Source: Octopus sinensis (lineage: Eukaryota). Taken from it: a stretch of DNA of 64,000 nt. Each line of letters begins with the position of its first letter. The stretch's first letter is position 1. A model generated the notes under the pieces. It did no database searches. It was not told where the DNA came from and saw only the letters and a program-made list of their open reading frames with translations. This document shows, in pieces, positions 24,481 to 56,907 of this stretch. Both the position numbers and the translations under genes were made by a program. The DNA is taken from contig NC_043010.1 of assembly GCF_006345805.1 (NCBI RefSeq), positions 58,466,001 to 58,530,000 of the forward strand, given 5' to 3'.

Positions 24481-25361
24481 TTGTTAAAACAGGTGTTTGG
24501 TCTTCATCAAAAACTTAGAATCCTCTCCCTTTTTACTAAAACCTCAGGTTACATCTTGTATAGCCAGATCTACTGGGACCTATTTCCTATCTCACTCACT
24601 AATGCTCCCACAGTACAGTTTCCGGAGGGCCAGGTCTAATGGCCTATCTACTGGAACTTGGTTTCTATGTCCTTCACCAGAGCCTCTACCTTGGTGGAAT
24701 CAATGATTTAACAGTGACTGCTATGGAACTCCCTTATGGGCTCCTGGCAATGATCTCATAGACTAGAAGGGTCCTACCTGATTAGATGATCACAGCTTAT
24801 ACATATTCCTCATCACATAAACATGATACCAGTACAACATATAACTCTGATTTCTTTCCACTGACATCCCATCAACTTTGCTAAACCACAAAACTCAGTT
24901 GTGTTATTCATGCATTTCCTGTTGCACTTGCCACCATCTGCAACAAAGCTTATCCTTTGGCAGGCAATAACACTATCTTAACTTGCTGAAATTGTAACCG
25001 ATGTGCAATCTAGACACATCACCTCAAGCTGAAACAGATTCCAGGAACAGAGACCCTTAAAGCCTTCACAAATAACTACTTAAAAATACAAATAAAGGAA
25101 AACACAGGATACAGTGAAAACCTGTTGACCCAATTCTGGAAATATTAATATTCATAAAATATAATTTAAGGTGCACTATATAAAAATAACTGTAACAATA
25201 ACGATGTCAAGTGGTTAAATATATTCATCTCACATATCTCCTGACTTTTTATCATTTATACACACACACACACGCACATGTACACACTCACATACAGACA
25301 TATACACAGGTTTACATAAATATACATTAAATTATACTATATAATATATAATGCAACTTAC

Positions 25362-27782
25362 CAATATTGTGGTGGGTGGACTCTTCTCCAGGGTACCCAC
25401 GTTCGACCAATCAATCTGAGATTCATACAGCGGGTAGAAATCTTCCTTACATTCCACAAATGGCATGTTTCTATTATTCATCTCAGAAGAGTACCTCACT
25501 GGGGTACCAGGAATACTGCTGCTCTGACACGGTAAAGGTTGATCAATTCTGTTACATATAGCTGACCTATTAACACCTTTCCTAGTGCTCTTGGCAGAGC
25601 GAGACTGACCACTGCTACATTTCATAATACACAATGTGATCGACACTACAATCACCACAGATACTATTACAGCTGCTACTACAAGGATAATCAATAATGG
25701 TACGTCCAGTGTTCTGTTCTTCTCTAAGTGGACAGTCGGCATTGGTGCTGATGTCTTGTTAGTGACCCTTAATGACAAAGACACAGTAGTTGTGGCTGAC
25801 AACACTGGGCTTCCAGAATCCTTGACCACAAGCACCAGTTCGTATGAGCCAGCATCGTTGAGATGAGGTGCACGCGAGAAAGACATTTGACCAGTTAAAG
25901 AGTTGAGTGTAAACAAGCGTTTATTGTTACCGTCAAGTATTCCATATTTGAGGAACGCATTTAAATGACTGTCTCTGTCAGACGCTCTAATCACAGTGAT
26001 GGCATTGGTACTTTGCGGGTGGTAGTGGACATTGATATGGAAAGGGTCAGTTGTAGGGTAGATGAAATACGGATTATTGTCGTTTCTGTCTAAAACCTCA
26101 ACAACAACATTCGCTGTGTTATTCAACGACGGTTTACCATTGTCTTTGACAAAAACCTCAAACTTATACATGTCTTCTTCTTCTCTGTCCAATGGTATGT
26201 TGCTGGTAATAAAACCATAATCACTCACCTGGAACGGTATGTTATTTCTGTCTTTACTCAACAGTGAGAACGTCAGTTGACCAGCACTTGCCAGGTCTGG
26301 GTCAGTGGCATTGATAAAACCTATAGGAAAGTTTGCTTTACCATTCTCATAGGTGAGGAAGTGGAATGTATCTTTGGTAAATTGCGGTTGCACATCGTTC
26401 ACATCCATTACTTGGATTGAGATCTTTCTCTCTGTCTTTAAAGCAGGGCTTCCATTGTCTTCACACACAATTCTCATGTTAAAATGGTCTAATGTTTCTC
26501 TGTCAAGGGATTTCTTCAGAGTAATCTTGTATTCCTTTGATCCTAAATGTGAGAGGACAACTGTATCATGTTCTAATTTACAACTCACTTCTCCATTTGC
26601 TCCAACATCGTTGTCCACCACATTCACATAAGCTAGATAACTGCCCACTTTTGTCCCTTCGTAAATAGCTGCAGTGCCCTTCTTCAATTCGGACACAAAA
26701 TTTATATCAATTTCAGGAGCATGGTTCTTTTCATTGAGAACATTCACCCGTACAATGGCAAAGGAATTTAAGGATGGATTCCCTCCATCTTTGGCCTCGA
26801 CATATAATTCATAAATGCGATCTCTCTCTTTTGAGAAATTTTCTGTGATAAACAATTTGCCAGACTCTCTTTTTAATATATAACATTTTTTAGCTTTGTC
26901 TGGTGTTTCTGAACTGAAATAATAAGACACTTTACCATTATTGCCAGAATCTGGGTCTTTTGCAGACAATGTCAAAATAGGGTTGTTGTTAGGATGTGTA
27001 TTTTTGATGGAAATATTGTAAATATGTTTTGAAAAAACTGGTGAGTTATCATTCACATCATTTATTTTAATATGAACATGTAGAATTCCTTGTTTTGAAG
27101 GTTGCCCTCCATCTTTAGCTATCACTTCTAGATTGTAACTATCTTTGATTTCTCTGTCTAGTTTGTCTCCAAGAACAATTCCTATCTTTGCTCTTCCTGT
27201 GATGGTTTTTCTCACAGACAATATAAATGGGTCGTTAAATTGTTTCTTCAATTTATATGTAATTTCTGAGTTTTCCATTCCAACATCTCTGTCAATGGCA
27301 TCTGGAATTAATCTTTCGGCTCCTTCTCCATCATCTTCATCATACGTAACATTTATTTGTTTCTGAGGAAACTCAGGGCTGTGATCGTTAATGTCTTCTA
27401 TAATTACTTTGACTTTCAGAATCTTCATAAAAGACTTGGCCTTGTTTACAGCTATTTTAATGTATTTGAAACATTGTTTCCTCGGTTTGCACAGAGACTC
27501 GGCATCAATTGTGTGTGCCGTGTACAATTTACCATCTTTAGTGACATTGAACACCTTGGAACTATCTGTTCTTCGGTGCTGTATTTGATTAAATATAATG
27601 GACGTCTGCTCATGTGATTCCATATTCTCCAAGACGAGGGAATCGGCTGCAACATCTCCAATAAATGTTCCTGTAATGTCTTCATCTTTCAAATAATATA
27701 CAATATCTTCACACACAGTGCTTTGCCAGAACAGAGCGAAGATACTCAGAAGAAAGAACAATTGCGTTTCCCTTGTTTCCAT
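25362..27782 (-). CDS. Pcdh: Protocadherin unit B large exon (signal peptide, EC1-EC6, TM, cytoplasmic tail; 807 codons, 814 aa with the terminal exon)
   Basis: Signal peptide METRETQLFFLLSIFALFWQSTVC; cadherin motifs DINDHSP, LDRE, AxDGG, DVNDNSP, DVNDVQP, DRNDNNP; EC1 Cys-X5-Cys (CKPRKQC) typical of Pcdhs; one TM; donor TTG|GTAAGT at 25361; 5' acceptor atatttcAG at 27817-27818. Symbol is family-level only. Confidence 0.97.
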
Positions 27783-28261: not shown

Positions 28262-28353
<92 letters not shown>

Positions 28354-29591
28354 ACAATAATTGTTTCTTATCAGGAACAAAAAAAGGTTTAATAGGACTG
28401 CAATAGAAGTGCTCTATTGGAAGAGACAAAAATATCAAACTAAAATCATTGAACAAGCAAATACAAGGTCAACCGCACCTAGTGCTTTAAACATAATTCA
28501 CCCCTGAAATGGCCATAGGGATAAGTAAACATGATTTCCTTCTTATATATAAGGCTTATTTTACCTGATTAAGATTTCTAAACGATGAACCTTATTTTAC
28601 TTTATTTACACGATATATATATATATTATATTTTTTATATGCTCCTATATGTATATATATTTATATATGTTTTATATATTTTTATATGCCTATATTTTTA
28701 TATACCTATATATTTCTATATATTACTTATATTATATTTTACTTTCTACGTCCATTTATAAATGTATTCTCTTTGAATCGCTAGAATATTAATTCTAAGT
28801 TTTAATGATAAGAATTTTTCTTGCACCATACCATATTATTATTATTATTACGTGCTGTACATATGAATTTTGTTCCATCTTGCGGGTTATATGTTTATTC
28901 TATAATTAAATGTTCGAATTATGAAATGACATGCGGTTGACCTTGTATTTGCTTGTTCAATGATTTTAGTTTGATATATATATATATATATTATTTTTTA
29001 CTATTATTTAACTGGACGCAAAGCATCCATTTCTAAGTATTAGTGAATTAAAACTTGAAATGAAAATATCAAAATAGACAGTGAAGCTTTGCAAATGGAA
29101 ACGGAAAGTGTTGCCGTTGCTACATCAATACCAGAAGTTGACATTGAGAAACCTTTTTAAAGAAGTGAATCATATATATAAAGCAATATTATTTATTTTT
29201 AATAAAAAAATCAAATGAAGAGCCTAAGATAAGTCTGAGGTTAAATTATTCCCACATCACAAGTATGGAAGCAATGGAGGAGCGATTTTCACATGAAAAG
29301 TAAATACACACACATCTCTATTTTATATATTAGATATACAGGTTGTGTAAGCTATTTAAAGACATAACTTTTTGGGGGCATTACTGCATTTTTTGCTAAC
29401 TCTGTATAATCTTTTGTTGTGTCTAGGGAGAGTCATTTTCTTTTTGTACCTTATAATGTAACACACTCACCGGTAAAATTTCCACGTTTTTCTTATTTTT
29501 ATTGTCTTAAAATTTTCGTTGCGTCTTGCAACCTTTTCAATAGTTTTGACTCCAAAAACGAAATGTATAATCTTTGTTTCAGAAAATAATA

Positions 29592-30622
29592 ATGGCAGAC
29601 CCTCAGCTTACTCAAGAAATGAAGAGGCATCTAGTTATTGTGGTTATAAGGGCTGAGCATAGCAATTTAGAAATATCTCAATTTTTAAAAGTTACCAGAT
29701 TTTCATCTACAAAGTTTGTAAGGAGCTAGAGACTGAAGATGGAAACATATCACCAGTATCAAAGCATAAAAAGCATTCTAAATGCTCTGAAATCATCAGA
29801 ACACCTGAATTAATCCAGAAAGTTTAAAAGACCATTTGATTACAATCCCAGAAAGTCCATGAGGTCAATTGCAAAAGATTTCCATGTATCACAAGGAACA
29901 GTTAGAAATGTTGTCCACAAAGACATCAGATATAAGTCTTATATGATGAGGAAAGGTCAATTGGTCAGAAAAAGCAAAAGAAAATCATTATATCAGATCT
30001 AAAAGGCTCTTAAATAAACTGAAAAATCCAGCAGATGAAAATTTGATTTGGTTTTTCTCAAATGAGAAAAACTTCAACCAGCATCAAAAAGTTTGCAGAA
30101 GAAATGACAGATGCTTATGTGCAGATCCTTCTGAAGTTCCAAGTGTTATGCATACAGAATTTCCTGCAACTGTCATGGATGAAGGACATGTGATGCCTCC
30201 TTATTTCTTTCCACAAAGCCTTAGAGTTAACTCTGCCGCCTACAGTGAGGTCCCGGAAACAATTGTTACGCCCTGGATTGACAGTGTATACAATGGAAGG
30301 CGATATGTGTTTCAGTAAGACTCTGCACTATCAGACATGGCTCTAGTAAACACAAGAATGGATGGCTAAAAATGTTCACGATCACATAACCCTTTATATT
30401 TGGCCTCTTAATTCCCCAGATCGCAATCTGTTAGACTATTGTAAGTGGAGCATTGTTGAGAAAGAGGTCAAGGAGCATGCCCATAACACCAAAGTTTCTT
30501 TGAAAGGTGCCATAGTCAGAGTAATGTTAAAAATGAACCAGGACCACTTGAATCGAATATGTAGGTGATTTAGATCTCATTTAGAAGCAGTTGTTGAAGC
30601 TGAAGATGGCTTTATTGAATAA
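29592..30622 (+). mobile_element. Tc1/mariner superfamily (maT/Bmmar1-like) transposase pseudogene
   Basis: MADPQLTQEMKRHLVIV...; WFFSNEKNF; VMPPYFFPQSLRVN; YVFQ*DSA; IWPLNSPDRNLLDY; FRSHLEAVVEAEDGFIE*; multiple stops and frameshifts. Confidence 0.8.
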
Positions 30623-30756
30623 CATTATAGAAAAGAAGGTTTATTTTTATCCTCATAGCAATTTTTGATAAATAAAGTTATTTGTTATTTTATATCTATA
30701 TTTTTATACACATTTATAAACATAGATCTATCCTCAAATATCTTACATACTCTGTA

Positions 30757-30841
<85 letters not shown>

Positions 30842-31111
30842 TGTTGTTTAATGTCCACTTTCCATATTGGCATGGGTTGGACAGTTTGACTGAGGACTGG
30901 CAAGCCAGGAGGCTCCACCAGGCTCCAATCTGATCTGGCAGTGTTTCTACAGCTGGATTCCCTTCCTGATGCCAACCACTCTGTGAGTGTAGTGGGCGCT
31001 TTTTTACATTCCACTGGCACAAGGACTAATCAGGCGGCACTGGTATCAGCCATACTTAAATGGTGCCTTTTATGTGCCACCGGCACGGATGCCAGTCAGG
31101 CGACACAGGCA

Positions 31112-31142
<31 letters not shown>

Positions 31143-31762
31143 GCCAGTGTCTCCTGACTGGCACCAAAATATATATATATATTTTGGTGAGGTTGGGTGC
31201 ATAGTGAGAGCTGGCAGTGATCTTCATAAAGCAGTTTGCCCAAACCAACATTGTTGCCATCATCATTTAACATTTGTTTTCCATACTTGGATGAGTTGGC
31301 TCGTTTGACAGGATCTGGTGAGCTAGAGCACTGTGGAAGCACCACAGTTAGCATCAGGGATCTGTGGCTGGATCCCTTCCTAATACCAGCCACTTTACAG
31401 AGTAGACATGTAAACATTTGAAAATAAACATTTCAGCAAGTAGAAAAGTACTCTATACTAACAGTAGAGTATCAAAATATATCTAATTAAACTGGAAACT
31501 TCAAAGATTGCGACATTGCATGAAATGATTGAGTATCAACATTATTTCATAATGCAACATATTGATTTTTTCTATTGATTACCTTCCCCTATACATCTGA
31601 TCTTATCCAACATTTTAGATTTTATATCCCCCCCCCCCGACCTCCATTCAAAATGAATTCTTCTGCTTTCTGTTACCTCAGTATCAACTTTAATAGTTTC
31701 TTATTTCATTTCTCAAATTTTATTCAAAGATTACACACAACAATCAGTGTCAGTTTCACCAT

Positions 31763-31793
<31 letters not shown>

Positions 31794-31818
31794 TGTATGT
31801 TTATATATATATATATAC

Positions 31819-31849
<31 letters not shown>

Positions 31850-32009
31850 GATATATATTTATATACACATACATACATATATATATATATACATACATAT
31901 ATATATTTATATATTCATACACATATACATATATATAATATACATACATATATATTTATATATACATACATACGTGTATATACATATATATATACACATA
32001 CACACATAT

Positions 32010-32400
32010 ACAGGGTGCAGTGAATAAACTGTCATCTAAATTACACGAAAATGAAAATAAAACTGACATCTCTGCACCCCCTCCCCCCAATCATAGGGGT
32101 TGCAGTCTGGGGAGTAAGCTGGCCAGATGTTATGGGTGATGTGGTCGCAGAAGTTGTCTGACAGCCGTGACAGGGTTCTCCTGCTTGTCTGGCATGGTGC
32201 AGAGTCCTGTTGCCAGACACAGGATCTTCCAGCAGCCACCCTCTTGACTGCCTCCTCCAAGCACTTGGAAAGCATGAGTTTTTTTACAGTATGTCCTCTA
32301 GATCACTACAAACAAATCATTTGTGCAGATTGTTCAGCAAAAGATATTGGAGAAAACCATCTACTTTGGATTACAAGAGACTGTCATCATGAATCATTGG
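32010..32400 (-). mobile_element. maT-like transposase fragment with terminal sequence
   Basis: ORF 32036-32275 includes VWQQDSAPC and IWPAYSPDCNPYD; starts with tacagggtg at a TA-rich flank. Confidence 0.7.
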
Positions 32401-32485
32401 CATAAATATATATGAGTGTGTGTGTTATCTGAATATCTCTCTGTCTATCTATCTATCCATCTATTTGTCTGTCTGCCTGTCTGTT

Positions 32486-32522
<37 letters not shown>

Positions 32523-34859: not shown

Positions 34860-34906
<47 letters not shown>

Positions 34907-35540: not shown

Positions 35541-35924
35541 ATCAAAGAGCCACCACAACTATGGCTGCTCTGTGTATATATTTCACCGTAGTCTTCATCT
35601 ATGTTTTTAACATTGATTTCAATACAATTACAACACTTCATCTGCACATTGAGAGATGTTATCATTAATAAGAATAACAACAATAATAATAATGATAATC
35701 ACTGAAATATCTCACTGAACCAAGCAGAAATATTCCTCCGTGATTGAATATTACAATAATTACAGATATTTGATATTAATTTGCATTATTAGAAATGAAA
35801 CAATAGTTGAGGTAGGTGTTTGTCAGTGATGTAAGGGTCCTTTATAACGGTATCTTAGCATTTTCTCCCATCACAACATTTCATGAAATATGTGCAACTG
35901 CCTAGCTTTCTGTATATTTATATA
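35541..35924. repeat. 384-bp unique-looking segment duplicated at 60344-60727 (intron 1 of unit B)
   Basis: Direct alignment by eye: 2 mismatches, no gaps. Confidence 0.95.
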
Positions 35925-36404: not shown

Positions 36405-36853
36405 CAAACACACACACACCGAATCAGGTACGGCACTACTACACGTGCCATCAGCTGTTGGAGGAGACGATGATGGAATTTCCAAGATGGGCTTACTTCC
36501 AGGGCTGCATAGGTTCCTCTCCTTCTCCGTGTCTGTGTGTCTGTGTAGCGAAATAGTTCAGTCAAGCAATCAATCTGTACACTGTGTGTGTGTGTGCATG
36601 CAGGCACGTTACAGTATCACTGCACTTTTCTGTGCATTTATATTTCGTGCTGCAGTTATGAGTAATGATGTCAGCATGCAGTGGTATGTGGTGTGGGTGG
36701 GTGGAGATGTGGTATTGGTATGCACTCTGGAAAAGGTTTAATCTTGGTATGTTGCATGCTATAAAATGAGTGGTAGTGAGTTATCAGATATTCTAGTGCA
36801 ATATATCACCTAGTGTAAATGCATGTATATATATATATATATTTGTGTGTGTG

Positions 36854-36902
<49 letters not shown>

Positions 36903-37377
36903 ATATATATGCATGTATTTACATTCATATATTAATGTACATATAAATATGTAGTTATGTGTGTGTGTGTATATATATAAATATACTACATATATACACA
37001 CCTATATATATATATATATACACCTCTATATATAGATATAGATATACACCTATATATATATATATTTATATGCATGTTTGTGTGTGTATATATATATATA
37101 TATTTATATATACATTCATATATTAATGTATATATATAAATATGTAGTTATGTGTGAGTGAGTGTATATATATATATATCCCAAAAAAAGCTGTAAGACC
37201 TATTTATAAATGTTCTAAAATCTTTCACAGCCTTGGATTTTTATCTCATTCTGAAAATTTATATATATATATATATATATATACATATATATATACATAC
37301 ACATATATATTTATACATACATATATACACTCATTCTCATATATATTCCACATGCACTGTCATGTTTCTGTGTAATT

Positions 37378-37492: not shown

Positions 37493-37516
37493 TTATTTCT
37501 TGATTCGGGTGGGTAA
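37493..37516 (-). CDS. Pcdh: Terminal coding micro-exon of Pcdh unit A (LPTRIKK*)
   Basis: Acceptor ctatcttcttatcttccAG (37517-37518); TTA CCC ACC CGA ATC AAG AAA TAA; followed by GATGTCAC as in the 62620 copy. Confidence 0.8.
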   Translation of the reverse strand, partial: LPTRIKK

Positions 37517-41538: not shown

Positions 41539-42112
41539 GGCGCAGGAGTGGCTGTGTGGTGAGTAGCTTGCTAACCAACCACATGGTTCCAGGTTCAGTA
41601 TCACTGCGTGGCATCTTGGGCAAGTGTCTTCTGCTATAGCCCCGGGCCGACCAATGCCTTGTGAGTGGATTTGGCAGACGGAAACTGAAAGAAGCCTGTC
41701 GTATATGTGTATGTATATATATATGTGTGTTTGTGTGTCTGTGTCCCCCTAGTGGTGTGTTTACGTCCCTGTCACTTAGCGGTTCGGCAAAAGAGACCGA
41801 TAGAATAAGTACTAGGCTTACAAAGAATAAGTCCCGGGGTCGATTTGCTCGACTAAAAGGTGGTGCTCCAGCATGGCCGCAGTCAAATGACTGGCCGAAC
41901 CGCTAAGTGACAGGGACGTAAACACACCACTAGGGGGACACAGACACACAAACACATACACACACACACACATATATATATACATACACATATACGACAG
42001 GCTTCTTTCAGTTTCCGTCTGCCAAATCCACTCACAAGGCATTGGGCGGCCCGGGGCTATAGCAGAAGACACTTGCCCAAGATGCCACGCAGTGATACTG
42101 AACCTGGAACCA
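41539..42112. mobile_element. SINE (41539-41893, +) followed by an inverted copy of its own 41584-41788 segment (41894-42112)
   Basis: Arms are near-perfect reverse complements and share a private internal deletion relative to the SINE copy at 1-283. Confidence 0.9.
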
Positions 42113-45100
42113 ATCGGGCCAACATACCAGCCAAATTGACTACATCCTTACAAGGCAAAGGGAGAGATGGCTGCTTATAAATGCCAAAACCTTCCCAGGT
42201 GAAGAATGTACCCCACAACATAGACTGGTAGTTAGTGACTTTAGGATCAGGACTAGGAGGACAACCAGAAGACGACCAACATGGAGAAGAAGGATCTGGA
42301 AGCTTAAGGATCCTGCAAATGGACAGAGATTTAGGGACATATTACTTGAAGCCTCTGACGAAGTAGAAGGGGATAGTAGAGCACAGGGGGTAGAAGACAG
42401 CTGGACGTTTCTAAGGGACAACCTGCTGAGAGCCACTGACCAGATCTGTGGCTGGTGCAAAGTCCCCTCTCGACCTAGAATAACGTGGTGTGGAACAATA
42501 TTGTAGACAGGGCTATTAGAGAAAAGAGACAGGCTTGGAAGGTCTGGAAAAATGGAGGTAGCAGGGAATTGTATCAGACTGCCAAAAGAGAAGCTAGGAG
42601 ACAGGTTTATTTAGCCAGAGGGGAAGCAGATAAGAAAAAATTTGCCAATGTTCTGCGCCATGAGGACCAAAGACTGGAGGTGTTTCGTGTTGCAAGACAG
42701 TGTGTGAGAGAGAATCGTGATGTGGTAGGAGAGAAGTGTGTTCGCATGGAAGATGGTTCACTTGCGCTAAATGAGGATGCAAAGAGAGAGGTTTGGAGAT
42801 GCCACTATGAAAGGTTGCTGAATGAAGAAAATGAATGGGATAAAGAGAGTCTGCCGAATGTTGACCCAACAGAGGGACCAGCTATCCGAGTTGATAGTTC
42901 TGTGGTAGCTAAGGCAATTAGAAGCATGAAGACAGGGAAAGCCCCAGGCCCATCAGGAATCACTGCAGAGATGCTCAAAATGTCTGGTAGTGTCGGCTAT
43001 AGCCTAGTCACCCATATAGTTAATCAGGTGATACACAAAGGGGTCATACCCAATGACTGGTGTAGCAGTATAATAGTCAACTGCTACAAAGGTAAAGGTG
43101 ATGCCCTAGATACAAATAACTACAGAGGTATCAAGCTGTTGGAGCAGGTGATGAAGGTTACGGAGAGGGTCATAGCCCAACTAATTAGAGAGAGAGTTAG
43201 TTTAGATGAGATGCAGTTTGGGTTTGTGCCAGGGAAAAGTACTACTGATGCTATATTCTTGGTAAGGCACCTGCAGGAGAAATACCTAGCCAAAGATAAG
43301 CCCCTGTACCTGGCTTTTGTTGACATGGAGAAAGCCTTCGACAGGGTCCCCCGATCCCTTATCTGGTGGGCAATGAGAAAACTAGGGATAGATGAATGGT
43401 TAGTGAGAGCTGTGCGGGCCATGTATAGGGACGCCGCTAGTAGGGTGAGGGTTGGAAATGAGTACAGTGAAGAATTCCGGGTAGAGGTAGGGGTCCACCA
43501 AGGCTCAGTACTCAGCCCCCTCCTATTTATCTTAGTCCTCCAGGCAATAACGGAGGAATTCAAGACAGGATGCCCTTGGGAGCTCCTCTATGCTGATGAC
43601 CTTGCTCTAATTGCTGAGTCGCTATCAGAACTGGAGGAGAAGTTTCAGGTGTGGAAACAAGGATTAGAATCGAAGGGCCTCAGAGTCAATCTAGCTAAAA
43701 CCAAAGTCGTAATCAGTAGGAAGGTAGACAAATCACAAACACCTTCAGGTAGATGGCCCTGCTCGATCTGTAGAAAAGGTGTAGGTAGAAACTCTATAAG
43801 ATGCACCAAGTGTAAGCTATGGACACATAAGAGATGCAGCAATGTCAAAGGAAGGCTAACTAGGAAGATGGTTTTTGTATGTGGCAGATGCTCAGGAACA
43901 ATAAACACTGAAAATGCTCTGAGACCAACTTCCGTCACTTTCCAGGGAGAAAAACTAGAAATAGTTGATAGTTTCCGTTACCTAGGTGACCAAGTCAGCA
44001 GCGGGGGCGGGGGTGTGTGCTGAAAGTGTAACTGCTAGAGTAAGAATAGCTTGGGCAAAGTTCAGAGAGCTCTTACCTCTGCTGGTGACAAAAGGCCTCT
44101 CGCACAGAGTGAAAGGCAGACTGTATGATGCGTGCGTACGAACAGCCATGCTACATGGCAGTGAAACATGGGCCGTGACTGCTGAGGATATGCGTAAGCT
44201 CGCTAGAAATGAAGCCAGTATGCTCCGATGGATGTGTAATGCCGGTACTCACACTCGGCAGAGTGTAAGTACCTTGAGAGAAAAGCTGGACCTAAGAAGC
44301 ATCAGTTGTGGTGTGCAAGAGAGACGTTTGCGCTGGTATGGTCATGTGGCGAGAATGGATGAAGATAGTTGTGTGAAAAAGTGCCACACCCTAGCGGTTG
44401 AGGGAACCTGTGGAAGAGGCAGACCCAGGAAAACCTGGGACGAGGTGGTGAAGCACGACCTTCGAACTTTAGGTCTCACCAAGGAAATGACTAGAGACCG
44501 AGACCTCTGGAAGTGTGCTGTGCGCGAGAAGACCCGGCAGGACAAGTGAGTCCACAACCCGTGGCCTTCTACATGGGATGGAGCCAGCCTACGTATGCAT
44601 ACCTTCCCTTCTTGGGACACAAAACTCTACTTGTGAAGACGTGTTGAGGCAAGTGAGGATCAGAATCGAAATCGATCAATGGAAATTGCGGATGTGCTAC
44701 CAGTGCCGAAACTCTGCTTGTGAAGACCCATTGAGGCAAGTGAGGATCAGAATCGAAATCGATCAATGGAAATCGATCAATGGAAATTGCAGATGTGTTA
44801 CCAGTGTCGAAACTCTGCTTGTGAAGACCCATTGAGGCAAGTGAGGATCAGAATCGAAATCGATCAATGGAAATCGATCAATGGAAATTGCAGATGTGTT
44901 ACCAGTGCCGGTGGCATGTAAGAGAACTTTCCGTTTCGCGACCGTTGCCAGCACCGCCCCGTTTCGTGTCCGTTGCCAGCCTCGCCTGGCCCTCGTGCAG
45001 GTGGCACATAAAAAGCACCATCCGTTCGTGGCCGTTTGCCAGCTCTGTCTGGCACCAGTGCGGGTGGCACGTAAAAAGCACCCACTACACTCACGGAGTG

Positions 45101-45250
45101 GTTGGCGTTAGGAAGGGCATCCAGCCGTAGAAACACTGCCAGATTTGACTGGGCCTGATGAAGCCTTCTGGCTTCACAGACCCCAGTAGAACCGTCCAAC
45201 CCATGCTAGCATGGAAAACGGACGCTAAATGATGATGATGATGATGATGA
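42113..45250 (+). mobile_element. 5'-truncated young RTE-clade LINE (end of APE endonuclease, RT, PHD-type finger, 3' UTR, (ATG)n tail)
   Basis: SQIDYIL..EEC.PQHRLVV (APE end); GKAPGPSG, NYRGIKLL, QFGFVPGKST, FVDMEKAFD, GVHQGSVLSP, LLYADD, FRYLGD, GRGRPRKTW; frameshifts near 42490 and 44005; tail (ATG)n ends at 45250. Confidence 0.95.
44622..44910 (+). repeat. Three tandem copies (87, 101, 101 bp) within the RTE 3' UTR
   Basis: Units start at 44622, 44709 and 44810 (aaactctgcttgtgaagac...ccagtgycg). Confidence 0.9.
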
Positions 45251-45550
45251 AACAGTTGTAATTGGTTCAGCCTGCAAAAGGACTTAACTTGTTTCATGTA
45301 TTTATGCAATTAGGTTTGCATATATTTTTGTTATTTTGCAATAAATATGGAGGGGTATGTCACTGTCTGGAACATCGAAGGAACATAAGAAGTACTGCTA
45401 TAATTGAGGGATAGTCATATGTGGAATGGATCAATAGACAGGCTGATGTATGGAAGGAGAACAGATGTAGGGGGACAATGAGGGCCAATGTACATGTATA
45501 TATGGATGGATGGACGGATTTGTATGTATATCTATGTATATATGTATATG

Positions 45551-45594
<44 letters not shown>

Positions 45595-48398: not shown

Positions 48399-48578
48399 TG
48401 TAAATCTGCAACATCATTCGTTCTGTCACAGCCAACCAAATTCACTCACAGGGCATTGATTGGCTGGATTGGAAGATCTTGCTGGAACTGAACTCAAAGC
48501 CATATGGTTGAGAAGCAAACGTTTTACCATTCAACCATGCCTGCATCTTTCTCTGTGTGTGTGTGCGTGTGTGTGTAT

Positions 48579-48609
<31 letters not shown>

Positions 48610-48630
48610 TGTATATATATATATACACAC

Positions 48631-48662
<32 letters not shown>

Positions 48663-48769
48663 GTATATATATATACACATATATATATACACATATATAT
48701 ATGTATATATATACACACATATATATATGTATATATATATACATATATATATATGTATATATATATGTG

Positions 48770-48850
<81 letters not shown>

Positions 48851-49259
48851 GTATGATGTGAGGCAGATAAGAGTATGTGAAGTATTCATCAGAGACCTGT
48901 CTGCTGACGTAAGCACACTCTGGCTTACGTACAGACTCTCATATTCTTCATCCTGCAACAACTACACTGCCTCCAGATGGGACACTTTGTACATCACATC
49001 TTGAACTGAAGGACCTTGAAAGCCCTGCTACATGAGGAAGTGGCTTCTAGCAAGACAGCACAAGGACAATGACATCTGTTTTCCTTTCATAGATGTGAGC
49101 AAGAGAAAGAGACGAACTCTCCTTATATGAAGATCAAAAAATGGGAGAATATTGCTGAGTAAAATGAATCTCAGTTGGTTTGAAATAATGATTTGTCCAT
49201 CTGTTCCATTAACTATGTGTTGATATTTAATACTGTATATTGTACATATATCTACATAT

Positions 49260-51480
49260 TGGAGCTCTTATTGTACTGAGCTGCAACGCCCAAACTGGCT
49301 CGAAAGTTATGCCTCTGGAGATGTGAACATTATACTTCTGAACATTCTGAATTCAATATGGACAGCATGTGCAGCATCGGTACCACTCAAGCACAAAAAA
49401 AACACCCAATAATGCAATTTGGGAGACTGGAGCAGTCTGACTTGTCAGGAAAGAATGCAGTAATGCTGAACAGGAATACAGAATGCACAAATCAGAGATC
49501 AACAGGAAAAAGCGCAATAGATCATCCAACCACCTCAAGCAGGTGACAAAAAAGGCAGTGCTTGAATTCGAACAGCGCATAGCAACCAACCCTGTTGGCA
49601 AAGTGTTCTGGAAGTATGTCTGTTCAAAACAGAGACCTCACTCTCCAGTTGGTCCCCTTCGCAATCCCCACACAGGACAGATTACTGGCAATCCCAAAGA
49701 ATGTGCAGAAATCATTGCTGGATGCTATGCAGGCATCTTTACTGTCGAAGATCGAAATGTTCCATCCCCATCACCACTGACACTGGACCCTATAACTACT
49801 ATGAAATTTACACCAGCAATGCTACAATGCCAACTTAAGAATAAACGCAACTATGCCTCTCCTGGTCTCGATGGTGTTACATACCTACTTCTCAAACATG
49901 GTGGGTACTTTCTTCTAAGCCAATTTTCTCTATTCTTCCAATTCTGTCTTGACAATGGTGTTACTCCAGAGCAGTGGAAAACTGCCAGTGTTATCCCTCT
50001 GTTCAAAAAAGGTGACCGCACATCGCCTGTCAACTATTGCCCTGTTAGTCTTACTAGCTGCATCACCAAACTGATGGAATCCTGTGTCAGGGAAACCCTC
50101 TGGAACTTCTGGAAGTCTCACAGCCTCATCCAGCTGTCACAATTTGGTTTTATTCCTAACTCCAGCTGCTGTAATCAACTCATCGAGTTTGTTGAGGACA
50201 TTACCCAAATCACTGATCGCAGATCCTGGGTGGATGTTGTTTACCTGGACTTTGTTAAGGCTTTTAATTCTGTGCCACACAAAAGACTTATGGTGGAACT
50301 CTCTGCGATGGGTGTAAGAGACTATCTCTATAACTGGTTGAAGTCCTTTATTATCGGCTGAAAAGAGTTTGTCACAGTTCTAGGACAGCACTCTTCACCC
50401 TATGAGATGACATCTGGTGTACCACAGGGATCTGTTCTTGGTCCCCTTTTATTTGTTGCATATGTTAATGACATAGATGCCAACTTAAAGAATGCCACAG
50501 TGCTGAAATATGCAGATGACATCAAGCTGTACATTGAAATAAAGAGGTCAGATCCTGTACACTATAGATCTGTATTGCAATCAGACCTGGACACAATGCA
50601 GCAGTGGATCATGGACTGACAACTCAAGCTGGCTGTGGACAAATGTACCACCATGCATTTTGAGAGGAAACACTCAGCGTCTACTTACTCCCTCCACAAC
50701 ACTAATCTCAAAAAGTCTTCGCGTGAACGTGACCTGGGTGTTATTGTCGACAGTGATTTGCGTTGGACAAAACACATCGCTAAAATTGCCAATAAGGCTG
50801 AGGGTGTCTTGGCATCACTCACCAAGTCCTTTGCGAGCCGCTCTCCGGCTATCTATCTGCGGCTTTATATAGCTATGGTGCGACCTAACCTGGAATTTGC
50901 ATCACCGGTCTGGAACCCCTATCTTGCCCAGGATATTAATCGTCTGGAAGCCATTCAGTGACGTGCAACCAAAAGAATACCCTCCATTGGGCATTTGCCA
51001 TATTCTGAACGCCTTACTTCCGTGGGCATGGATACACTGAAACTCCGATGTCTGGCAGCTGACTTGGCAGACACCCATAAAATTATTAACCATCTTACAA
51101 ACAATAACTCTGAGCACCTTTTCAAACTCCACCTGTCTAACACCCATGGACATGTTTACAAAGTCAGAAAACAGCACAGCTCCCATGACTTCAGGAAACA
51201 TTTTTTCACGCTGAGGGTTGCTGAAGCATGGAACAAACTGCTGGCATCAGTTGTTAGTTGTCGGAGCACTGCATCCTTCAAAACTTCCATGCTTCCTGAG
51301 ATTCGCCAACACTACACCTGATTTTCTCCCCGCCCCATACACACGCAAGCATGTATCTGACTCATACACTGTTCACTTCCCAGACATTTGTACATTACTG
51401 CACATGCTTTATACGCACTTTTGACAAGTTGTGGTGCACCTGAGCACTGTATGCAATAATTTCATTATTATTATTATTAT
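49260..51480 (+). mobile_element. CR1-group LINE, 5'-truncated, inactivated by nonsense codons
   Basis: ORFs at 49483, 50407, 50635 and 50995 share one frame, separated only by TGA stops; SPGLDGV, YCPVSLTS, VYLDFVKAF, SGVPQGSVLGPLLF, YADD, ERDLGV; (ATT)n tail ends at 51480. 5' edge approximate. Confidence 0.93.
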
Positions 51481-52088: not shown

Positions 52089-52098
52089 CATATATATA

Positions 52099-52182
<84 letters not shown>

Positions 52183-52256
52183 TATAGATATAGATATATA
52201 TATATATATACTTATATATATATATATAAAAATATACATATAAATATAGATAAATA

Positions 52257-52313
<57 letters not shown>

Positions 52314-52349
52314 TAAATATATATATTATATATATATGTATATATATAT

Positions 52350-52387
<38 letters not shown>

Positions 52388-52413
52388 ATATATATATATA
52401 TGTATATATATAA

Positions 52414-52469
<56 letters not shown>

Positions 52470-52520
52470 AGTATATATATATATATAAGTATATATATAT
52501 ATAAGTATATATATGTACAC
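52089..52520. repeat. Long imperfect (TA)n microsatellite, representative of many (TA)n, (CA)n, (GATA/GACA)n and (ATT)n tracts
   Basis: Direct inspection. These tracts account for most IYIYIY/HTHT ORFs in the track. Confidence 0.95.
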
Positions 52521-52649
52521 ATATACACACACATTACTATATGTCATAAACATGAATATACATTGTGTTGCATATAAAGACCTCATATATTTAATAAACT
52601 TGTCTAAATTCTGCAGATAATACATATAAACATGTCTGCATACTGTATA

Positions 52650-54281: not shown

Positions 54282-54356
54282 ATATGCACTTTCTGACAAG
54301 TCGTGGTGCACCTGAGCACTGTATACAATAAATTCATTATTATTATTATTATTATT
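54282..54356 (+). mobile_element. Short 3'-end fragment of the CR1-type LINE
   Basis: gcactttctgacaagtcgtggtgcacctgagcactgtatacaataa plus (ATT)n matches 51413-51480. Confidence 0.8.
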
Positions 54357-54481
54357 CACACATATACATATATAATATAAAATAATAGACATAGAAAGTT
54401 ACATGGATAGACAGACAGATAAACACAGAAACATATAGATAGATAAATAGACAGATAGAAAGATTATATAATGCAACTTAC

Positions 54482-56907
54482 CAATATTGTATTGGGTGGA
54501 CTCTTCTCCAGGGTACCCACGTTTGACCAATCAATCTGAGACTCATACTGCGGGTAGAAATCTTCCTTACATTCCACAAATGGCATGTTTCTATTATTCA
54601 TCTCAGAAGAGTACCTCACTGGGGTACCAGGAATACTGCTGCTCTGACACGGTAAAGGTTGATCAATTCTGTTACATATAGCTGACCTATTAACACCTTT
54701 CCTAGTGCTCTTGGCAGAGCGAGACTGACCACTGCTACATTTCACAATACACAGTGTGATCGACACTACAATCACCACAGATACTATTACAGCTGCTACT
54801 ACAAGGATAATCAATAATGGTACGTCCAGTGTTCTGTTCTTCTCTAAGTGGACAGTCGGCATCGGTGATGATGTCTTGTTAGTGACCCTTAATGACAAAG
54901 ACACAGTAGTTGTGGCCGACAACACTGGGCTTCCAGAATCCTTGACCACAAGCACCAGTTCGTATGAGCCAGCATCGTTGAGATGAGGTGCACGCGAGAA
55001 AGACATTTGACCAGTTAAAGAGTTGAGTGTAAACAAGCGTTTATTGTTACCGTCAAGTATTCCATATTTGAGGAACGCATTTAAATGACTGTCTCTGTCA
55101 GACGCTCTAATCACAGTGATGGCATTGGTACTTTGCGGGTGGTAGTGGACATTGATATGGAAAGGGTCAGTTGTAGGGTAGATGAAATACGGATTATTGT
55201 CGTTTCTGTCTAAAACCTCAACAACAACATTCGCTGTGTTATTCAACGACGGTTTACCATTGTCTTTGACAAAAACCTCAAACTTTACATGTCTTCTTCT
55301 TCTCTGTCCAATGGTATGTTGCTGGTAATAAAACCATAATCACTCACCTGGAACGGTATGTTATTTCTGTCTTTACTCAACAGTGAGAACGTCAGTTGAC
55401 CAGCACTTGCCAGGTCTGGGTCAGTGGCATTGATAAAACCTATAGGAAAGTTTGCTTTACCATTCTCATAGGTGAGGAAGTGGAATGTATCTTTGGTAAA
55501 TTGCGGTTGCACATCATTCACATCCATTACTTGGATTGAGATCTTTCTCTCCGTCTTTAAAGCAGGGCTTCCATTGTCTTCACACACAATTCTCATGTTA
55601 AAATGGTCTAATGTTTCTCTGTCAAGGGATTTCTTCAGAGTAATCTTGTATTCCTTTGATCCTAAATGTGAGAGGACAACTATATCATGTTCTAATTTAC
55701 AACTCACTTCTCCATTCGCTCCAACATCGTTGTCCACCACATTCACATAAGCTAGATAACTGCCCACTTTAGTTCCTTCATAAATAGCTGCAGTGTCCTT
55801 CTTCAATTCAGACACAAAATTGATTCCTATTTTGGGGGGATGGTTCTTTTCATTGAGAACATTCACCCGTACAATGGCAAAGGAATTTAAGGATGGATTC
55901 CCTCCATCTTTGGCCTCCACATACAATTCATAAATGCGATCTCTCTCTTTTGAGAAATTTTCTGTGATAAACAGTTTTCCGGAATGTTTTTTTAAAATAT
56001 AACATTTTTTAGCTTTGTCTGGTGTTTCTGAACTGAAATAATAAGACACTTTACCATTATTGCCAGAATCTGGGTCTTTTGCAGACAATGTCAAAATGGG
56101 GTTGTTGTTAGGATGTGTATTTTTGATGGAAATATTGTAAATATGTTTTGAAAAAACTGGTGAGTTATCGTTTACATCATTTATTTTAATATGAACATGT
56201 AGAATTCCTTGTTTTGAAGGTTGCCCTCCATCTTTAGCTATCACTTCTAGATTGTAACTATCTTGTATCTCTCTGTCTAGTTTGTCTCCAAGAACAATTC
56301 CTATCTTTGCTCTTCCTGTGATGGTTTTCCTCACAGACAATATAAATGGGTCGTTAAATTGTTTCTTCAATTTATATGTAATTTCTGAGTTTTCCATTCC
56401 AACATCTCTGTCAATGGCATCTGGAATTAATCTTTCGGCTCCTTCTCCATCATCTTCATCATACGTAACATTTATTTGTTTCTGAGGAAACTCAGGGCTG
56501 TGATCGTTAATGTCTTCTATAATTACTTTGACTTTCAGAATCTTCATAAAAGACTTGGCCTTGTTTACAGCTATTTTAATGTATTTGAAACATTGTTTCC
56601 TCGGTTTGCACAGAGACTCGGCATCAATTGTGTGTGCCGTGTACAATTTACCATCTTTAGTGACATTGAACAACTGGGAACTTTCCATCCATTCTTGCTG
56701 AAGTTGGTTATATGTTAGTAGATCTCTGTCTGTCAGAGATCCACTGTCACCAAGCATGGCATCAGCAGCAACATCTCCAATAAATGTTTGGGGACTACTT
56801 TCTTCGTCGACATGGTACTCGAGGTCAATTGAAATGCAGGAGTGTAGTAATGCAACCAAAATATTTATTTGAATGATCAACTGTCGACCTGGCGTTCCTC
56901 CTTCCAT
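54482..56907 (-). pseudogene. Pcdh: Protocadherin unit A large exon with a 1-bp deletion at 55285/55286 (true pseudogene allele or assembly error); 816 aa if repaired
   Basis: ATG at 56907 (MEGGTPGRQLIIQINILVALLHSCIS; the ORF-track start at 56988 is TTG). ATG TAT AAG of unit B reads ATG TAA AG here, giving a stop in EC5. The remainder (54482-55284) continues in the shifted frame to donor TTG|GTAAGT at 54481. Confidence 0.92.

What the first reader, a model, noticed from the sequence alone, without database searches (positions are those of the whole stretch)
25345..56672. Exon-restricted homogenisation: units A and B are near-identical over 2.2 kb but have different signal peptides and EC1 N-terminal halves
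Seen: identity runs from 17 nt inside intron 2 (25345/54465) to mid-EC1 (27553/56672; 2209 vs 2208 bp) and then stops abruptly. Introns and flanks do not align, and the first ~50 residues of EC1 differ strongly (EDIVYYLKDEDITGTF...HRRTDSSKV vs IDLEYHVDEESSPQTF...QEWMESSQL). Within the tract I count 12 amino-acid differences, 6 of them within about 65 residues across the end of EC3 and start of EC4 (RE/KH, A-E-D/P-K-G, G/D). Established: vertebrate clustered Pcdhs undergo gene conversion but keep EC2-EC3 diverse, and bind through antiparallel EC1:EC4 and EC2:EC3 contacts. Inference: gene conversion or unequal crossover that spares the N-terminal half of EC1 could generate new specificities by EC1 swapping, with the EC4-proximal changes as possible partner-surface co-variation.
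Basis: partly seen in the sequence, partly recalled or inferred. Interest (0 to 1): 0.72.

Follow-up and report, generated by a model that had tools for sequence, protein, structure and literature searches.

The report
Octopus protocadherin paralogues homogenised by gene conversion
Two neighbouring octopus protocadherin genes are kept almost identical over 2.2 kb by repeated gene conversion, while a few short stretches predicted to form the binding surface stay different; this is the pattern known from vertebrate protocadherin clusters, and it suggests a testable binding contact.

Summary
Window 25345-27553 and 54465-56672 (both genes on the minus strand) are 98.05% identical, and identity falls to chance level within about 50 nt on each side.

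The window is most likely Octopus sinensis, at the end of a tandem array of about 13 protocadherin genes. The orthologous loci of O. vulgaris and O. bimaculoides, and the Argonauta array, support gene conversion:
- The 5' part of the exon groups by gene type and the 3' part by species, each with 100% bootstrap.
- dS between the two units drops from about 1.9 to 0 at the breakpoint.
- O. vulgaris has the same two boundaries.
- Small patches are swapped or mosaic between the paralogues.

Whether these are assembly errors or recent pseudogenisation is unresolved.

The hybrid structure of unit B is old, not a fresh EC1 swap. The A-E-D/P-K-G difference is an ancient two-state cassette on the first strand of EC4. 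In all 18 paralogue lineages examined it travels with the type of the EC1 C-D loop, although the cassettes between them are shuffled.

This is a new member of a known kind.

The parts
25362..27782 (-). Unit A large exon (ATG at 27782, donor GTAAGT after 25362). It encodes 807 aa: signal peptide, EC1-EC6, transmembrane segment and most of the cytoplasmic tail. The frame is intact.
   Evidence: ORF and translation. Pfam Cadherin 1.5e-64 and Cadherin_2. 99% identical to O. vulgaris CAI9733544.1.
21847..21870 (-). Unit A terminal mini-exon, LPTRIKR*.
   Evidence: Peptide search preceded by an AG acceptor. It matches the C-termini of the annotated orthologues.
54482..56907 (-). Unit B (called B' here) large exon. 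ATG at 56907. A 1-bp deletion between 55286 and 55285 gives an in-frame TAA.
   Evidence: The RefSeq model XP_036365280.1 skips 28 aa exactly there.
37493..37516 (-). Unit B' terminal mini-exon, LPTRIKK*. Intron 2 is about 17 kb and carries retroelement ORFs.
25345..27553 (-). Homogenised tract, unit A copy.
54465..56672 (-). Homogenised tract, unit B' copy.
27554..27782 (-). Unit A spared segment: signal peptide and EC1 strands A-C plus the C-D loop. It is orthologous to Argonauta P0002 and to O. bimaculoides and O. vulgaris A-type genes.
56673..56907 (-). Unit B' spared segment: its own signal peptide and EC1 N-half. It is conserved in O. vulgaris and O. bimaculoides with omega about 0.06-0.14.
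27558..27584 (-). Unit A EC1 C-D loop, IQHRRTDSS (R-type). It lies immediately 5' of the conversion breakpoint.
   Evidence: The AF2 model places it between strands C (38-42) and D (54-56), where pLDDT is lowest.
56677..56703 (-). Unit B' EC1 C-D loop, LQQEWMESS (W-type).
26706..26720 (-). Unit A EC3-EC4 linker and first strand of EC4, APEID.
   Evidence: AF2 predicts a strand at mature residues 333-338.
55825..55839 (-). Unit B' EC3-EC4 linker and first strand of EC4, PPKIG. It differs from unit A at 7 of 15 nt, synonymous sites included.
26652..26877 (-). Central patch of old differences, unit A copy (unit B' copy at 55771-55996). It holds 16 of the 19 differences that O. vulgaris shares orthologously.
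26979..27150 (-). Swapped patch, unit A copy (unit B' copy at 56098-56269). At 6 sites window A equals O. vulgaris B' and window B' equals O. vulgaris A.
13746..14154 (-). Orphan 408-bp copy of the end of EC6, the transmembrane segment and the cytoplasmic part. It is 98-99% identical to the array genes, with an open frame extended by 21 codons to a stop.
   Evidence: It is used as the last coding exon in the RefSeq model.
35541..35924 (-). 384-bp non-coding block upstream of unit A, 99.5% identical to 60344-60727.
60344..60727 (-). 384-bp non-coding block upstream of unit B'.
62620..62643 (-). Terminal mini-exon (LPTRIKK*) of the next gene upstream in the array. Its large exon lies beyond the end of the window.
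   Evidence: Collinear with O. vulgaris L005.

Best explanation
The window is the distal end of a tandem array of about 13 protocadherin genes in an octopus, most likely Octopus sinensis. Each gene has one large exon (signal peptide, six cadherin repeats, transmembrane segment) and its own 8-codon terminal exon.

The paralogues exchange sequence by repeated, short, non-crossover gene conversion at the DNA level. This keeps a common backbone nearly identical within each species: most of EC4, EC5, EC6, the transmembrane segment, the cytoplasmic part, and parts of EC2 and EC3.

Unit B (B') is an old mosaic. It keeps its own signal peptide and EC1 N-half, which is a diverged B-type. From mid EC1 through EC3 it was overwritten by unit A's sequence before O. 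bimaculoides and O. vulgaris split. It keeps a B-type patch at the EC3/EC4 junction. Later exchanges have kept it homogenised with A.

Shown: the conversion, its boundaries, its age, and that A was the donor for the EC1 C-half and the EC3 C-half.

Inferred: tracts stop where flanking divergence (about 45%) blocks heteroduplex extension. Selection also removes converted copies that uncouple predicted binding-surface elements, in particular the EC1 C-D loop and the first strand of EC4. Those two would meet in an antiparallel EC1:EC4 trans dimer.
For: Species and context
- The window is collinear with O. vulgaris OX597827.1 at 93-98% non-coding identity, and with O. bimaculoides at 82-95%.
- The O. 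sinensis model XP_036365280.1 contains both units exactly.

Conversion
- dS between A and B' is 1.6-2.5 in the EC1 N-half. Just after the breakpoint it is 0 (window), 0.06 (O. vulgaris) and 0.16 (O. bimaculoides). It is 0.066 over the whole tract.
- Orthologue dS is 0.035-0.043 (window vs O. vulgaris), 0.10-0.18 (vs O. bimaculoides) and 0.7-0.9 (vs Argonauta).
- NJ bootstrap: the 5' part groups by type at 100%. The 3' part groups all five Argonauta copies (A and B types) at 100%. Nucleotides 230-411 group A and B' of three Octopus species at 100%, with O. bimaculoides A and B' paired at 76%.
- O. vulgaris shows the same tract with the same two boundaries.
- Site patterns in the tract: 19 differences shared orthologously (16 of them within 226 bp), 6 swapped sites within 172 bp, and 3 concerted sites within 17 bp.
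- 8 of the 10 substitutions private to window B' match states of B-type copies.

Direction
- B' carries the A-type EC1 C-half and EC3 C-half. These are A-specific in Argonauta as well.

B' has been functional
- Its private EC1 N-half shows 4 synonymous and 1 non-synonymous change against O. bimaculoides, omega 0.06.

Coupling of loop and strand
- R-type loop with E-I-D and W-type loop with K-I-G(E) in 18/18 paralogue lineages.
- In both O. vulgaris and Argonauta B-type copies these are among the few site pairs at least 100 aa apart with r2 = 1, against a median r2 of 0.06-0.07.
- The intervening cassettes show all four combinations with each of them.

Structure
- The AF2 model puts residues 67-75 in the EC1 C-D loop and 357-362 in the first strand of EC4.
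- Harrison 2020 lists the EC1 C-D loop and the EC4 A-strand as interfacial in delta-protocadherin dimers.
- Nicoludis 2016 names positions 41 (EC1) and 320/321 (EC4) among residues homologous to clustered-protocadherin interface residues. These align to the octopus residues through Pcdh-alpha7.
Against: - Unit B' is frameshifted in this window, and at a different site in O. vulgaris. The copy may therefore be dying, and its differences from A may lack functional meaning.
- The loop/strand coupling rests on few independent events: two B subtypes in two lineages, plus the A and B' lineages. Naive Fisher p-values overstate it.
- Across the wider octopus protocadherin family there is no general charge complementarity between the loop and residue 357.
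- The homologous C-D loop (RGD) of vertebrate alpha-protocadherins is reported as exposed in their dimers.
- GC3 is only modestly higher in the most homogenised part (0.43 vs 0.31), so there is no clear sign of biased conversion.
- The swapped patch could in principle be a short-read polishing artefact in one assembly.
Confidence: 0.85

Rival explanations
1. A single ancient event (one large conversion or a hybrid-gene duplication) made unit B', and strong purifying selection alone has kept the tract similar since. There has been no continuing exchange.
For: The boundaries are shared by three species. 19 differences are shared orthologously between the window and O. vulgaris. In the 3' half, dS between A and B' (0.032) is close to orthologue dS between the window and O. 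vulgaris (0.035-0.043).
Against: The hybrid predates the O. bimaculoides split (dS 0.10-0.18). Yet A vs B' dS is 0 across about 35 synonymous sites just after the breakpoint, and 0.032 in the 3' half. O. bimaculoides A and B' share species-specific changes and pair at 76%. Swapped and concerted patches exist. In Argonauta the A and B types differ by 0-0.7% in the 3' half, despite dS of 0.7-0.9 to Octopus.
Confidence: 0.07
2. Unit B' is a pseudogene in this genome. Conversion from its neighbours is simply overwriting a dead copy, and the remaining differences are leftovers without function.
For: A 1-bp deletion gives a stop at codon 540 in the window. An independent 1-bp deletion (AAA to AA) lies in EC1 of O. 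vulgaris B'. The specificity-type segments of B' (EC1 C-half, EC3 C-half) have been replaced by A-type sequence.
Against: - Each species has only one lesion in 2.4 kb, and the lesions are not shared.
- From my own recollection, not checked here, both assemblies are long-read based. Short-read polishing is weak in near-identical paralogues, and several other O. vulgaris array models are also truncated or fused.
- Omega is 0.06-0.14 in the B'-private segment against O. bimaculoides, and 0.20 over the tract between the window and O. vulgaris.
- All Argonauta copies are intact.
Confidence: 0.3
3. Assembly artefact: a collapsed or chimeric assembly pasted one exon sequence into two places.
For: The O. 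bimaculoides assembly has N gaps exactly over the homogenised parts. This shows that such regions are hard to assemble.
Against: The independently assembled O. vulgaris locus has the same two genes with the same boundaries and collinear flanks. The two window copies differ at 43 sites, of which 19 are shared with the respective O. vulgaris orthologues.
Confidence: 0.02
4. Unequal crossing-over, or an RNA-mediated (cDNA-templated) process, explains the exon-restricted homogenisation.
For: The genes are tandem and in the same orientation. Homogenised stretches are mostly exonic.
Against: Introns and intergenic DNA are at chance-level identity. A crossover hybrid would share unit A's 3' flank. 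Identity runs 17 nt into the intron, starts in mid-exon, and does not include the terminal mini-exons. This does not fit a spliced-RNA template.
Confidence: 0.03

Closest known systems
Gene conversion in vertebrate clustered protocadherin genes (Noonan et al. 2004, as summarised in Etlioglu et al. 2016, PMC4978886)
   Same: Tandem protocadherin variable exons. Homogenisation is restricted to coding sequence and strongest in the membrane-proximal repeats and the cytoplasmic part (lowest dS in EC5/EC6). Recognition repeats stay diverse. Species-specific clustering of paralogues.
   Different: There are no shared constant exons, since each octopus gene has its own terminal exon. The segments that escape are short cassettes (EC1 N-half and C-D loop, EC1 C-half, EC2 first strands, EC3 C-half, first strand of EC4) rather than whole EC2-EC3. 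The array expanded independently of vertebrate clusters.
Statements on cephalopod protocadherin arrays (Albertin et al. 2022, PMC9068888; Styfhals et al. 2019, PMC6339937)
   Same: These papers already suggest that near-identical clustered octopus protocadherins reflect recent duplication and/or homogenisation by gene conversion.
   Different: In the texts I could read the suggestion is general. I found no breakpoints, no domain-resolved analysis, no cross-species test and no cassette coupling there.
Antiparallel EC1-4 trans dimers of clustered and delta protocadherins (Nicoludis 2016, Cooper 2016, Harrison 2020)
   Same: The octopus EC1-4 region is most similar in sequence to delta2 and clustered protocadherin structures (6vg1 E = 7e-86, 5dzv, 5iu9). 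The coupled octopus sites map to elements listed as EC1:EC4 interface: the EC1 C-D loop / position 41, and the EC4 A-strand / positions 320-321.
   Different: No octopus dimer has been tested. The octopus C-D loop aligns about 6 residues longer than that of Pcdh-gammaA1. In vertebrates EC1:EC4 is viewed mainly as affinity-giving and EC2:EC3 as specificity-giving.

Membership tests
Interlocus gene conversion / concerted evolution in a tandem array | Within the tract, paralogues of one species are more alike than orthologues of different species | tested here: met
   Argonauta A vs B types differ by 0-0.7% in the 3' half, against 11-18% to Octopus. All five Argonauta copies form one clade at 100%. 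O. bimaculoides A and B' pair at 76%.
Interlocus gene conversion / concerted evolution in a tandem array | Incongruent phylogenies on the two sides of a breakpoint | tested here: met
   The 5' part groups by type at 100% and the 3' part by species at 100%. Maximum chi-square is 761 against a permutation maximum of 30.5.
Interlocus gene conversion / concerted evolution in a tandem array | Homogenisation at synonymous sites, not only of protein sequence | tested here: met
   dS is 1.6-2.5 before the breakpoint and 0-0.16 just after it.
Interlocus gene conversion / concerted evolution in a tandem array | Flanking DNA is not homogenised (separates conversion from unequal crossover or segmental duplication) | tested here: met
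   55-65% mismatch in introns and upstream DNA in both species. The exception is a separate 384-bp block.
Interlocus gene conversion / concerted evolution in a tandem array | Exchange events seen directly in pedigrees or populations | not testable with these tools
   No read or population data were available.
Vertebrate-type clustered protocadherin locus | Many variable first exons spliced to shared constant exons | tested here: not met
   Each unit has its own terminal mini-exon (21847-21870, 37493-37516, 62620-62643), and these differ in sequence.
Vertebrate-type clustered protocadherin locus | Conversion strongest in EC4-EC6 and the cytoplasmic part, weakest in recognition repeats | tested here: met
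   Informative variable sites among array copies lie almost entirely between residues 67 and 430. The backbone from EC4 onward is near-invariant.
Vertebrate-type clustered protocadherin locus | Raised GC3 in converted regions (biased conversion) | tested here: inconclusive
   GC3 is 0.43 in nt 1180 to the end, against 0.31 in nt 230-1180 and 0.33-0.40 in nt 1-229.
Protocadherin (delta/clustered-like) protein | N-terminal Cadherin_2 domain, six EC repeats and a single transmembrane segment | tested here: met
   Pfam Cadherin (5 stretches) and Cadherin_2. Best solved relatives are delta2 and clustered protocadherins. The AF2 EC1-4 model has mean pLDDT 85.7.
Protocadherin (delta/clustered-like) protein | Homophilic antiparallel EC1-4 trans dimer | not testable with these tools
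   Indirect support only: coupled EC1-loop and EC4-strand cassettes, and mapping onto the literature.

The most novel reading that the evidence does not exclude
In octopod protocadherin arrays, gene conversion both homogenises a backbone and shuffles a small set of ancient binding-surface cassettes among paralogues, some older than the Argonauta-Octopus split. Selection keeps one pair locked together: the EC1 C-D loop (Arg-rich or Trp type) and the first strand of EC4 (E-I-D or K-I-G). These two touch in an antiparallel homophilic dimer. If so, this would be a natural compensatory pair that reveals the binding geometry of cephalopod protocadherins. It would also be a route to new self-recognition specificities that arose independently of vertebrates.
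Probability: 0.3. Interest if true: 0.75.

Novelty: new member of a known kind. Interest (0 to 1): 0.5.

Why it matters
Cephalopods and vertebrates expanded protocadherins independently. Whether octopus protocadherins work as homophilic recognition tags is, as far as I know, untested.

This locus shows with breakpoints and cross-species tests that the octopus array evolves as vertebrate clusters do: a converted backbone, with diverse segments that are predicted to form the binding surface.

The coupled EC1-loop/EC4-strand cassettes give a concrete, cheap experiment on binding mode and specificity, namely loop and strand swaps in cell-aggregation assays.

There is also a practical warning. These arrays are mis-annotated (fused and truncated models) and carry 1-bp indels that may be assembly errors.

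Tried and rejected
- Exact-product look-ups of unit A and of P0017 found nothing, because public models here are fused or partial.
- A family-wide test for charge complementarity between the EC1 loop and residue 357 across 116 octopod protocadherins showed no general rule. G at 359 and W in the loop are peculiar to this array.
- A second homologue search with a 338-aa loop-to-linker query found no further species carrying this array, so no extra independent lineages were available.
- The evolutionary-coupling list of Nicoludis 2016 did not give a usable 41-320 pair.
- Noonan 2004 and Albertin 2015 are not held in the library. The vertebrate pattern is therefore cited through PMC4978886.
B-type copies carry either state.
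- I considered an unequal-crossover (Lepore-type) origin of B' and rejected it, because the 3' flank is unrelated.
- I considered that the 384-bp block is a 5' UTR exon. I found no shared splice donor at its end and left this open.

Full report
**Observation.** Both genes lie on the minus strand.
- Window 25345-27553 and 54465-56672 align with 2165 matches in 2208 columns and one 1-bp gap.
- In 50-column windows identity is 47-50/50 inside the tract and about 25-35/50 outside it, with the change occurring within one window at each end.
- A maximum chi-square test puts the 5' breakpoint at about nt 226-229 of the coding sequence. Chi-square is 761, against a maximum of 30.5 in 1000 permutations.
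- Unit A is an intact 2421-nt exon (27782 to 25362, donor GTAAGT), so identity does extend 17 nt into the intron.
- The 12 amino-acid differences and the cluster of six within 65 residues are confirmed.
- In true unit-A numbering the differences are K213Q, R305K, E306H, A355P, E357K, D359G, G369D, T407I, A680S, M721V, L786Q and T805N. Alignment columns run two higher.

The 2209 vs 2208 bp difference is a 1-bp deletion in unit B between 55286 and 55285. ATG TAT AAG becomes ATG TAA, which splits the ORF. Two further shared pieces exist. One is a 384-bp non-coding block upstream of both units, 99.5% identical. The other is a 408-bp orphan copy of the transmembrane/cytoplasmic region at 13746-14154.

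**What the locus is.** Unit A has a Cadherin_2 domain and cadherin repeats. Its relatives are octopod protocadherins.
- The window is collinear with O. vulgaris chromosome OX597827.1 at 93-98% non-coding identity (loci L005 and L004), and with O. bimaculoides CM046614.1 at 82-95%.
- The fused O. sinensis RefSeq model XP_036365280.1 contains unit B exactly, apart from a 28-residue skip placed over the frameshift. It contains unit A exactly up to residue 707. The window is therefore most likely O. sinensis.
- In O. vulgaris the array has about 13 consecutive gene models, CAI9733532-544. The window covers its last two genes and the terminal mini-exon of the gene before them.
- Each gene has its own 8-codon terminal exon (LPTRIKK/R*). 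There are no shared constant exons.
- Three N-terminal types exist. B has about 11 copies in O. vulgaris and 6 in Argonauta hians. A has one copy in each of the four species.

**Gene conversion.** They are incongruent.
- *Trees.* For nt 1-229 the A, B' and B clades each have 100% bootstrap across species. For nt 1180-2421 all five Argonauta copies (four B, one A) form one clade at 100%. For nt 230-411 the A and B' copies of three Octopus species form one clade at 100%, and O. bimaculoides A and B' pair at 76%.
- *Synonymous divergence.* dS between A and B' is 1.6-2.5 in the EC1 N-half. Just after the breakpoint it is 0, 0.06 and 0.16 in the window, O. vulgaris and O. bimaculoides.
- *Age.* O. 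bimaculoides B' already carries A-type sequence after the same breakpoint, so the hybrid predates that split (orthologue dS 0.10-0.18). Yet window A vs B' dS is 0 in the first 59 codons of the tract and 0.032 in its 3' half. Exchange has therefore continued since.
- *Same boundaries elsewhere.* O. vulgaris shows the same tract with the same two boundaries.
- *Site patterns in the window/O. vulgaris quartet*. Nineteen differences are shared orthologously, 16 of them within 226 bp (A 26652-26877). Six sites within 172 bp are swapped: window A equals O. vulgaris B', and window B' equals O. vulgaris A. Three sites within 17 bp are shared by both paralogues of one species.
- *Donors.* Eight of the ten substitutions private to window B' match states of B-type copies, which points to several donors.
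- *Alternatives.* Introns and intergenic DNA are at chance identity. This excludes unequal crossover and simple segmental duplication. The 17 intronic nucleotides, the mid-exon 5' boundary and the unconverted terminal exons argue against an RNA template.
- *Assembly artefact.* The independent O. vulgaris assembly and the 19 orthologously shared differences argue against one. The O. bimaculoides assembly does have N gaps exactly over the homogenised parts.

**Anatomy of unit B'.** The EC1 C-half (CKPRKQCFKYIKIAVNKAKSF) and the EC3 C-half (YYFSSETPDKAKKCY...) of B' are A-type. The A-type state of both is shared with the Argonauta A gene. B-type copies of O. vulgaris and Argonauta carry a different, conserved state. 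Unit A was therefore the donor.

B' keeps three things of its own:
- its signal peptide and EC1 N-half;
- the pair K305/H306;
- a patch at the EC3/EC4 junction that is B-type.

**Is B' functional?** The window and O. vulgaris each carry one 1-bp deletion, at different sites. O. vulgaris has AAA to AA in EC1.
- There are no other lesions.
- The B'-private EC1 N-half shows 4 synonymous and 1 non-synonymous change against O. bimaculoides, omega 0.06. By my own binomial estimate this has p of about 0.007 against neutrality.
- Omega over the tract between the window and O. vulgaris is 0.20.
- Several other O. vulgaris array models are truncated or fused, while all Argonauta copies are intact.
- From my own recollection, not checked here, both Octopus assemblies are long-read based.

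I lean towards consensus indel errors or very recent decay, and I cannot decide between them here.

**The array is a mosaic of cassettes.** I aligned the O. vulgaris copies, the window genes, the O. bimaculoides pieces and seven Argonauta copies. From most of EC4 onward the backbone is near-invariant within a species. Variation is confined to a few cassettes:
- the EC1 N-half;
- the EC1 C-D loop;
- the EC1 C-half;
- the first strands of EC2;
- the EC3 C-half;
- the EC3-EC4 linker with the first strand of EC4;
- residue 369.

Several cassette states occur in both Octopus and Argonauta, so they are older than that split. Cassettes are combined differently in different copies. For example, the EC2 state QSEINLTFGERD and the EC3 states RRH/RQY occur with both loop types. 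This is what patchy conversion among paralogues would produce.

A-E-D vs P-K-G does not track the A/B type of EC1 as a whole. B-type copies carry either state (Ov534, Ov539, Ah339 and Ah341 have P-E-I-D).

It does track the EC1 C-D loop. R-type loops (IQRQRT, IQHRRT, MHHHRT) go with E357/D359. W-type loops (MQQQWTE, IQQQWTE, LQQEWME) go with K357/G359, or E359 in O. vulgaris B'. This holds in 18 of 18 paralogue lineages.
- Among B-type copies alone, the loop-by-linker pairs are 8 of the 10 site pairs at least 100 aa apart with r2 = 1 in O. vulgaris (474 pairs, median r2 0.07). In Argonauta they are again at r2 = 1.
- Naive exact probabilities are 1/126 (O. vulgaris/O. sinensis B copies), 1/15 (Argonauta B copies) and 2e-5 (all copies). 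These overstate the evidence, because paralogues are not independent and many pairs were scanned.
- The linker cassette differs at 7 of 15 nt, synonymous sites included. It is an old haplotype, not a few recent mutations.
- The 5' conversion breakpoint of the A/B' tract lies two codons after the loop.

**Structural mapping.**
- An AF2 model of EC1-4 (mean pLDDT 85.7) places residues 67-75 between strands C and D of EC1, where confidence is lowest. It places residues 357-362 in the first strand of EC4.
- Harrison et al. 2020 list the C-D loop of EC1 and the A-strand of EC4 among interfacial elements of delta-protocadherin dimers.
- Nicoludis et al. 2016 name positions 41 (EC1) and 320/321 (EC4) among residues homologous to clustered-protocadherin interface residues. 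Through the Pcdh-alpha7 alignment these correspond to octopus R70 and E357/I358.
- Cooper et al. 2016 report an EC1-EC4 salt bridge, R40-E328, in zebrafish Pcdh19.
- Against a direct contact: the alpha-protocadherin RGD (C-D) loop is reported as exposed. The wider octopus family also shows no general charge rule.

I rate direct, selected coupling at about 0.3-0.4.

**Comparison with what is known.** The pattern parallels vertebrate clustered protocadherins: conversion is strongest in EC4-6 and the cytoplasmic part and weakest in recognition repeats. It occurs here in an independently expanded array without constant exons. Cephalopod papers already suggest gene conversion in general terms. I found no domain-resolved or cross-species analysis. 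This is therefore a new member of a known kind, with one potentially new and testable detail, the coupled cassette pair.

**Verdict.** Gene conversion is strongly supported (0.85). 'EC1 swapping' is better described as an old mosaic kept in place by a divergence barrier and probably by selection. The co-variation idea is suggestive. The functional status of unit B' is unresolved.

Noticed in passing
window 55285-55287 (minus strand); unit A equivalent 26166: A 1-bp deletion in unit B' turns ATG TAT AAG into ATG TAA, a frameshift and stop at codon 540 of unit A's numbering, in EC5. O. vulgaris B' is intact here but has its own 1-bp deletion (AAA to AA) at the CKPRK codons of EC1. The RefSeq O. 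sinensis model skips 28 residues over the window's lesion.
   Followed up: partly
window 13746-14154 (minus strand), ORF continuing to about 13680: An orphan 408-bp copy of the end of EC6, the transmembrane segment and the cytoplasmic part, 98-99.8% identical to array genes, with B-type states. Its boundaries are sharp. Its frame is open and is extended by 21 new codons (FETQHVPCKKRYLVVTEVNVG*). It is present at the orthologous place in O. vulgaris. The fused RefSeq model XP_036365280.1 uses it as the last coding exon. It could be a relic kept similar by conversion, or a real alternative terminal exon.
   Followed up: partly
window 35541-35924 and 60344-60727: A 384-bp non-coding block with sharp edges, 99.5% identical between its two copies. 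It lies 1.6-1.9 kb downstream of the preceding gene's terminal exon, that is 7.8 kb upstream of unit A's ATG and 3.4 kb upstream of unit B's. It is 98-99% identical to the O. vulgaris orthologues and 94% to O. bimaculoides. It is absent from the loci around B-type copies. No shared splice donor was seen. It may be a converted regulatory element or a non-coding exon.
   Followed up: partly
window 41867-45252, with ORF 42485-44023 (+); also ORF 49483-50361 (+): Reverse-transcriptase ORFs (RVT_1, one with a PHD finger) sit inside the 17-kb intron 2 of unit B'. The 3.4-kb stretch 41867-45252 has no counterpart in O. vulgaris, where the flanks abut at L005:21617. It looks like a lineage-specific retroelement insertion.
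   Followed up: partly
window 26979-27150 and 56098-56269: At six sites, including K213Q, window A carries the O. vulgaris B' state and window B' carries the O. vulgaris A state. This is a reciprocal-looking patch swap between paralogues since the two species split. Alternatively it could be a polishing artefact in one assembly.
   Followed up: partly
window 48560-48860, 52089-52563, 36800-37330, 31786-32012: Satellite-like repeats give many overlapping direct and inverted self-matches at 75-88% identity in the intergenic and intronic DNA between the two units.
   Followed up: no
window 56930-56960 vs 62640-62670 (minus strand): The acceptor-like sequence just upstream of unit B's ATG (ttgttccag|TTACCA, reading ...LLFQLP) resembles the acceptor and first codons of the terminal mini-exons (ttttcag|TTACCAAC, LLFQLPTRIKK). 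This may be chance or a trace of how the 5' end of B' arose.
   Followed up: no
L006 (O. bimaculoides CM046614.1), N runs at 29372-31698 and 42925-43790: The assembly gaps in O. bimaculoides fall exactly on the homogenised parts of B' and A. Public gene models across this array in three species are fused, truncated or partial (1571-aa, 4660-aa and 1044-aa models). Protocadherin counts for octopus from such annotations may be off.
   Followed up: partly
Argonauta loci L001/L002; alignment, residues 163/165 and 288-326: In Argonauta B-type copies the EC2 residues AIDKD vs AFDED are in complete association with the EC3 C-half cassette type (2 vs 4 copies). This may be a second coupled pair, this time across the predicted EC2:EC3 contact. 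There are too few copies to judge.
   Followed up: no
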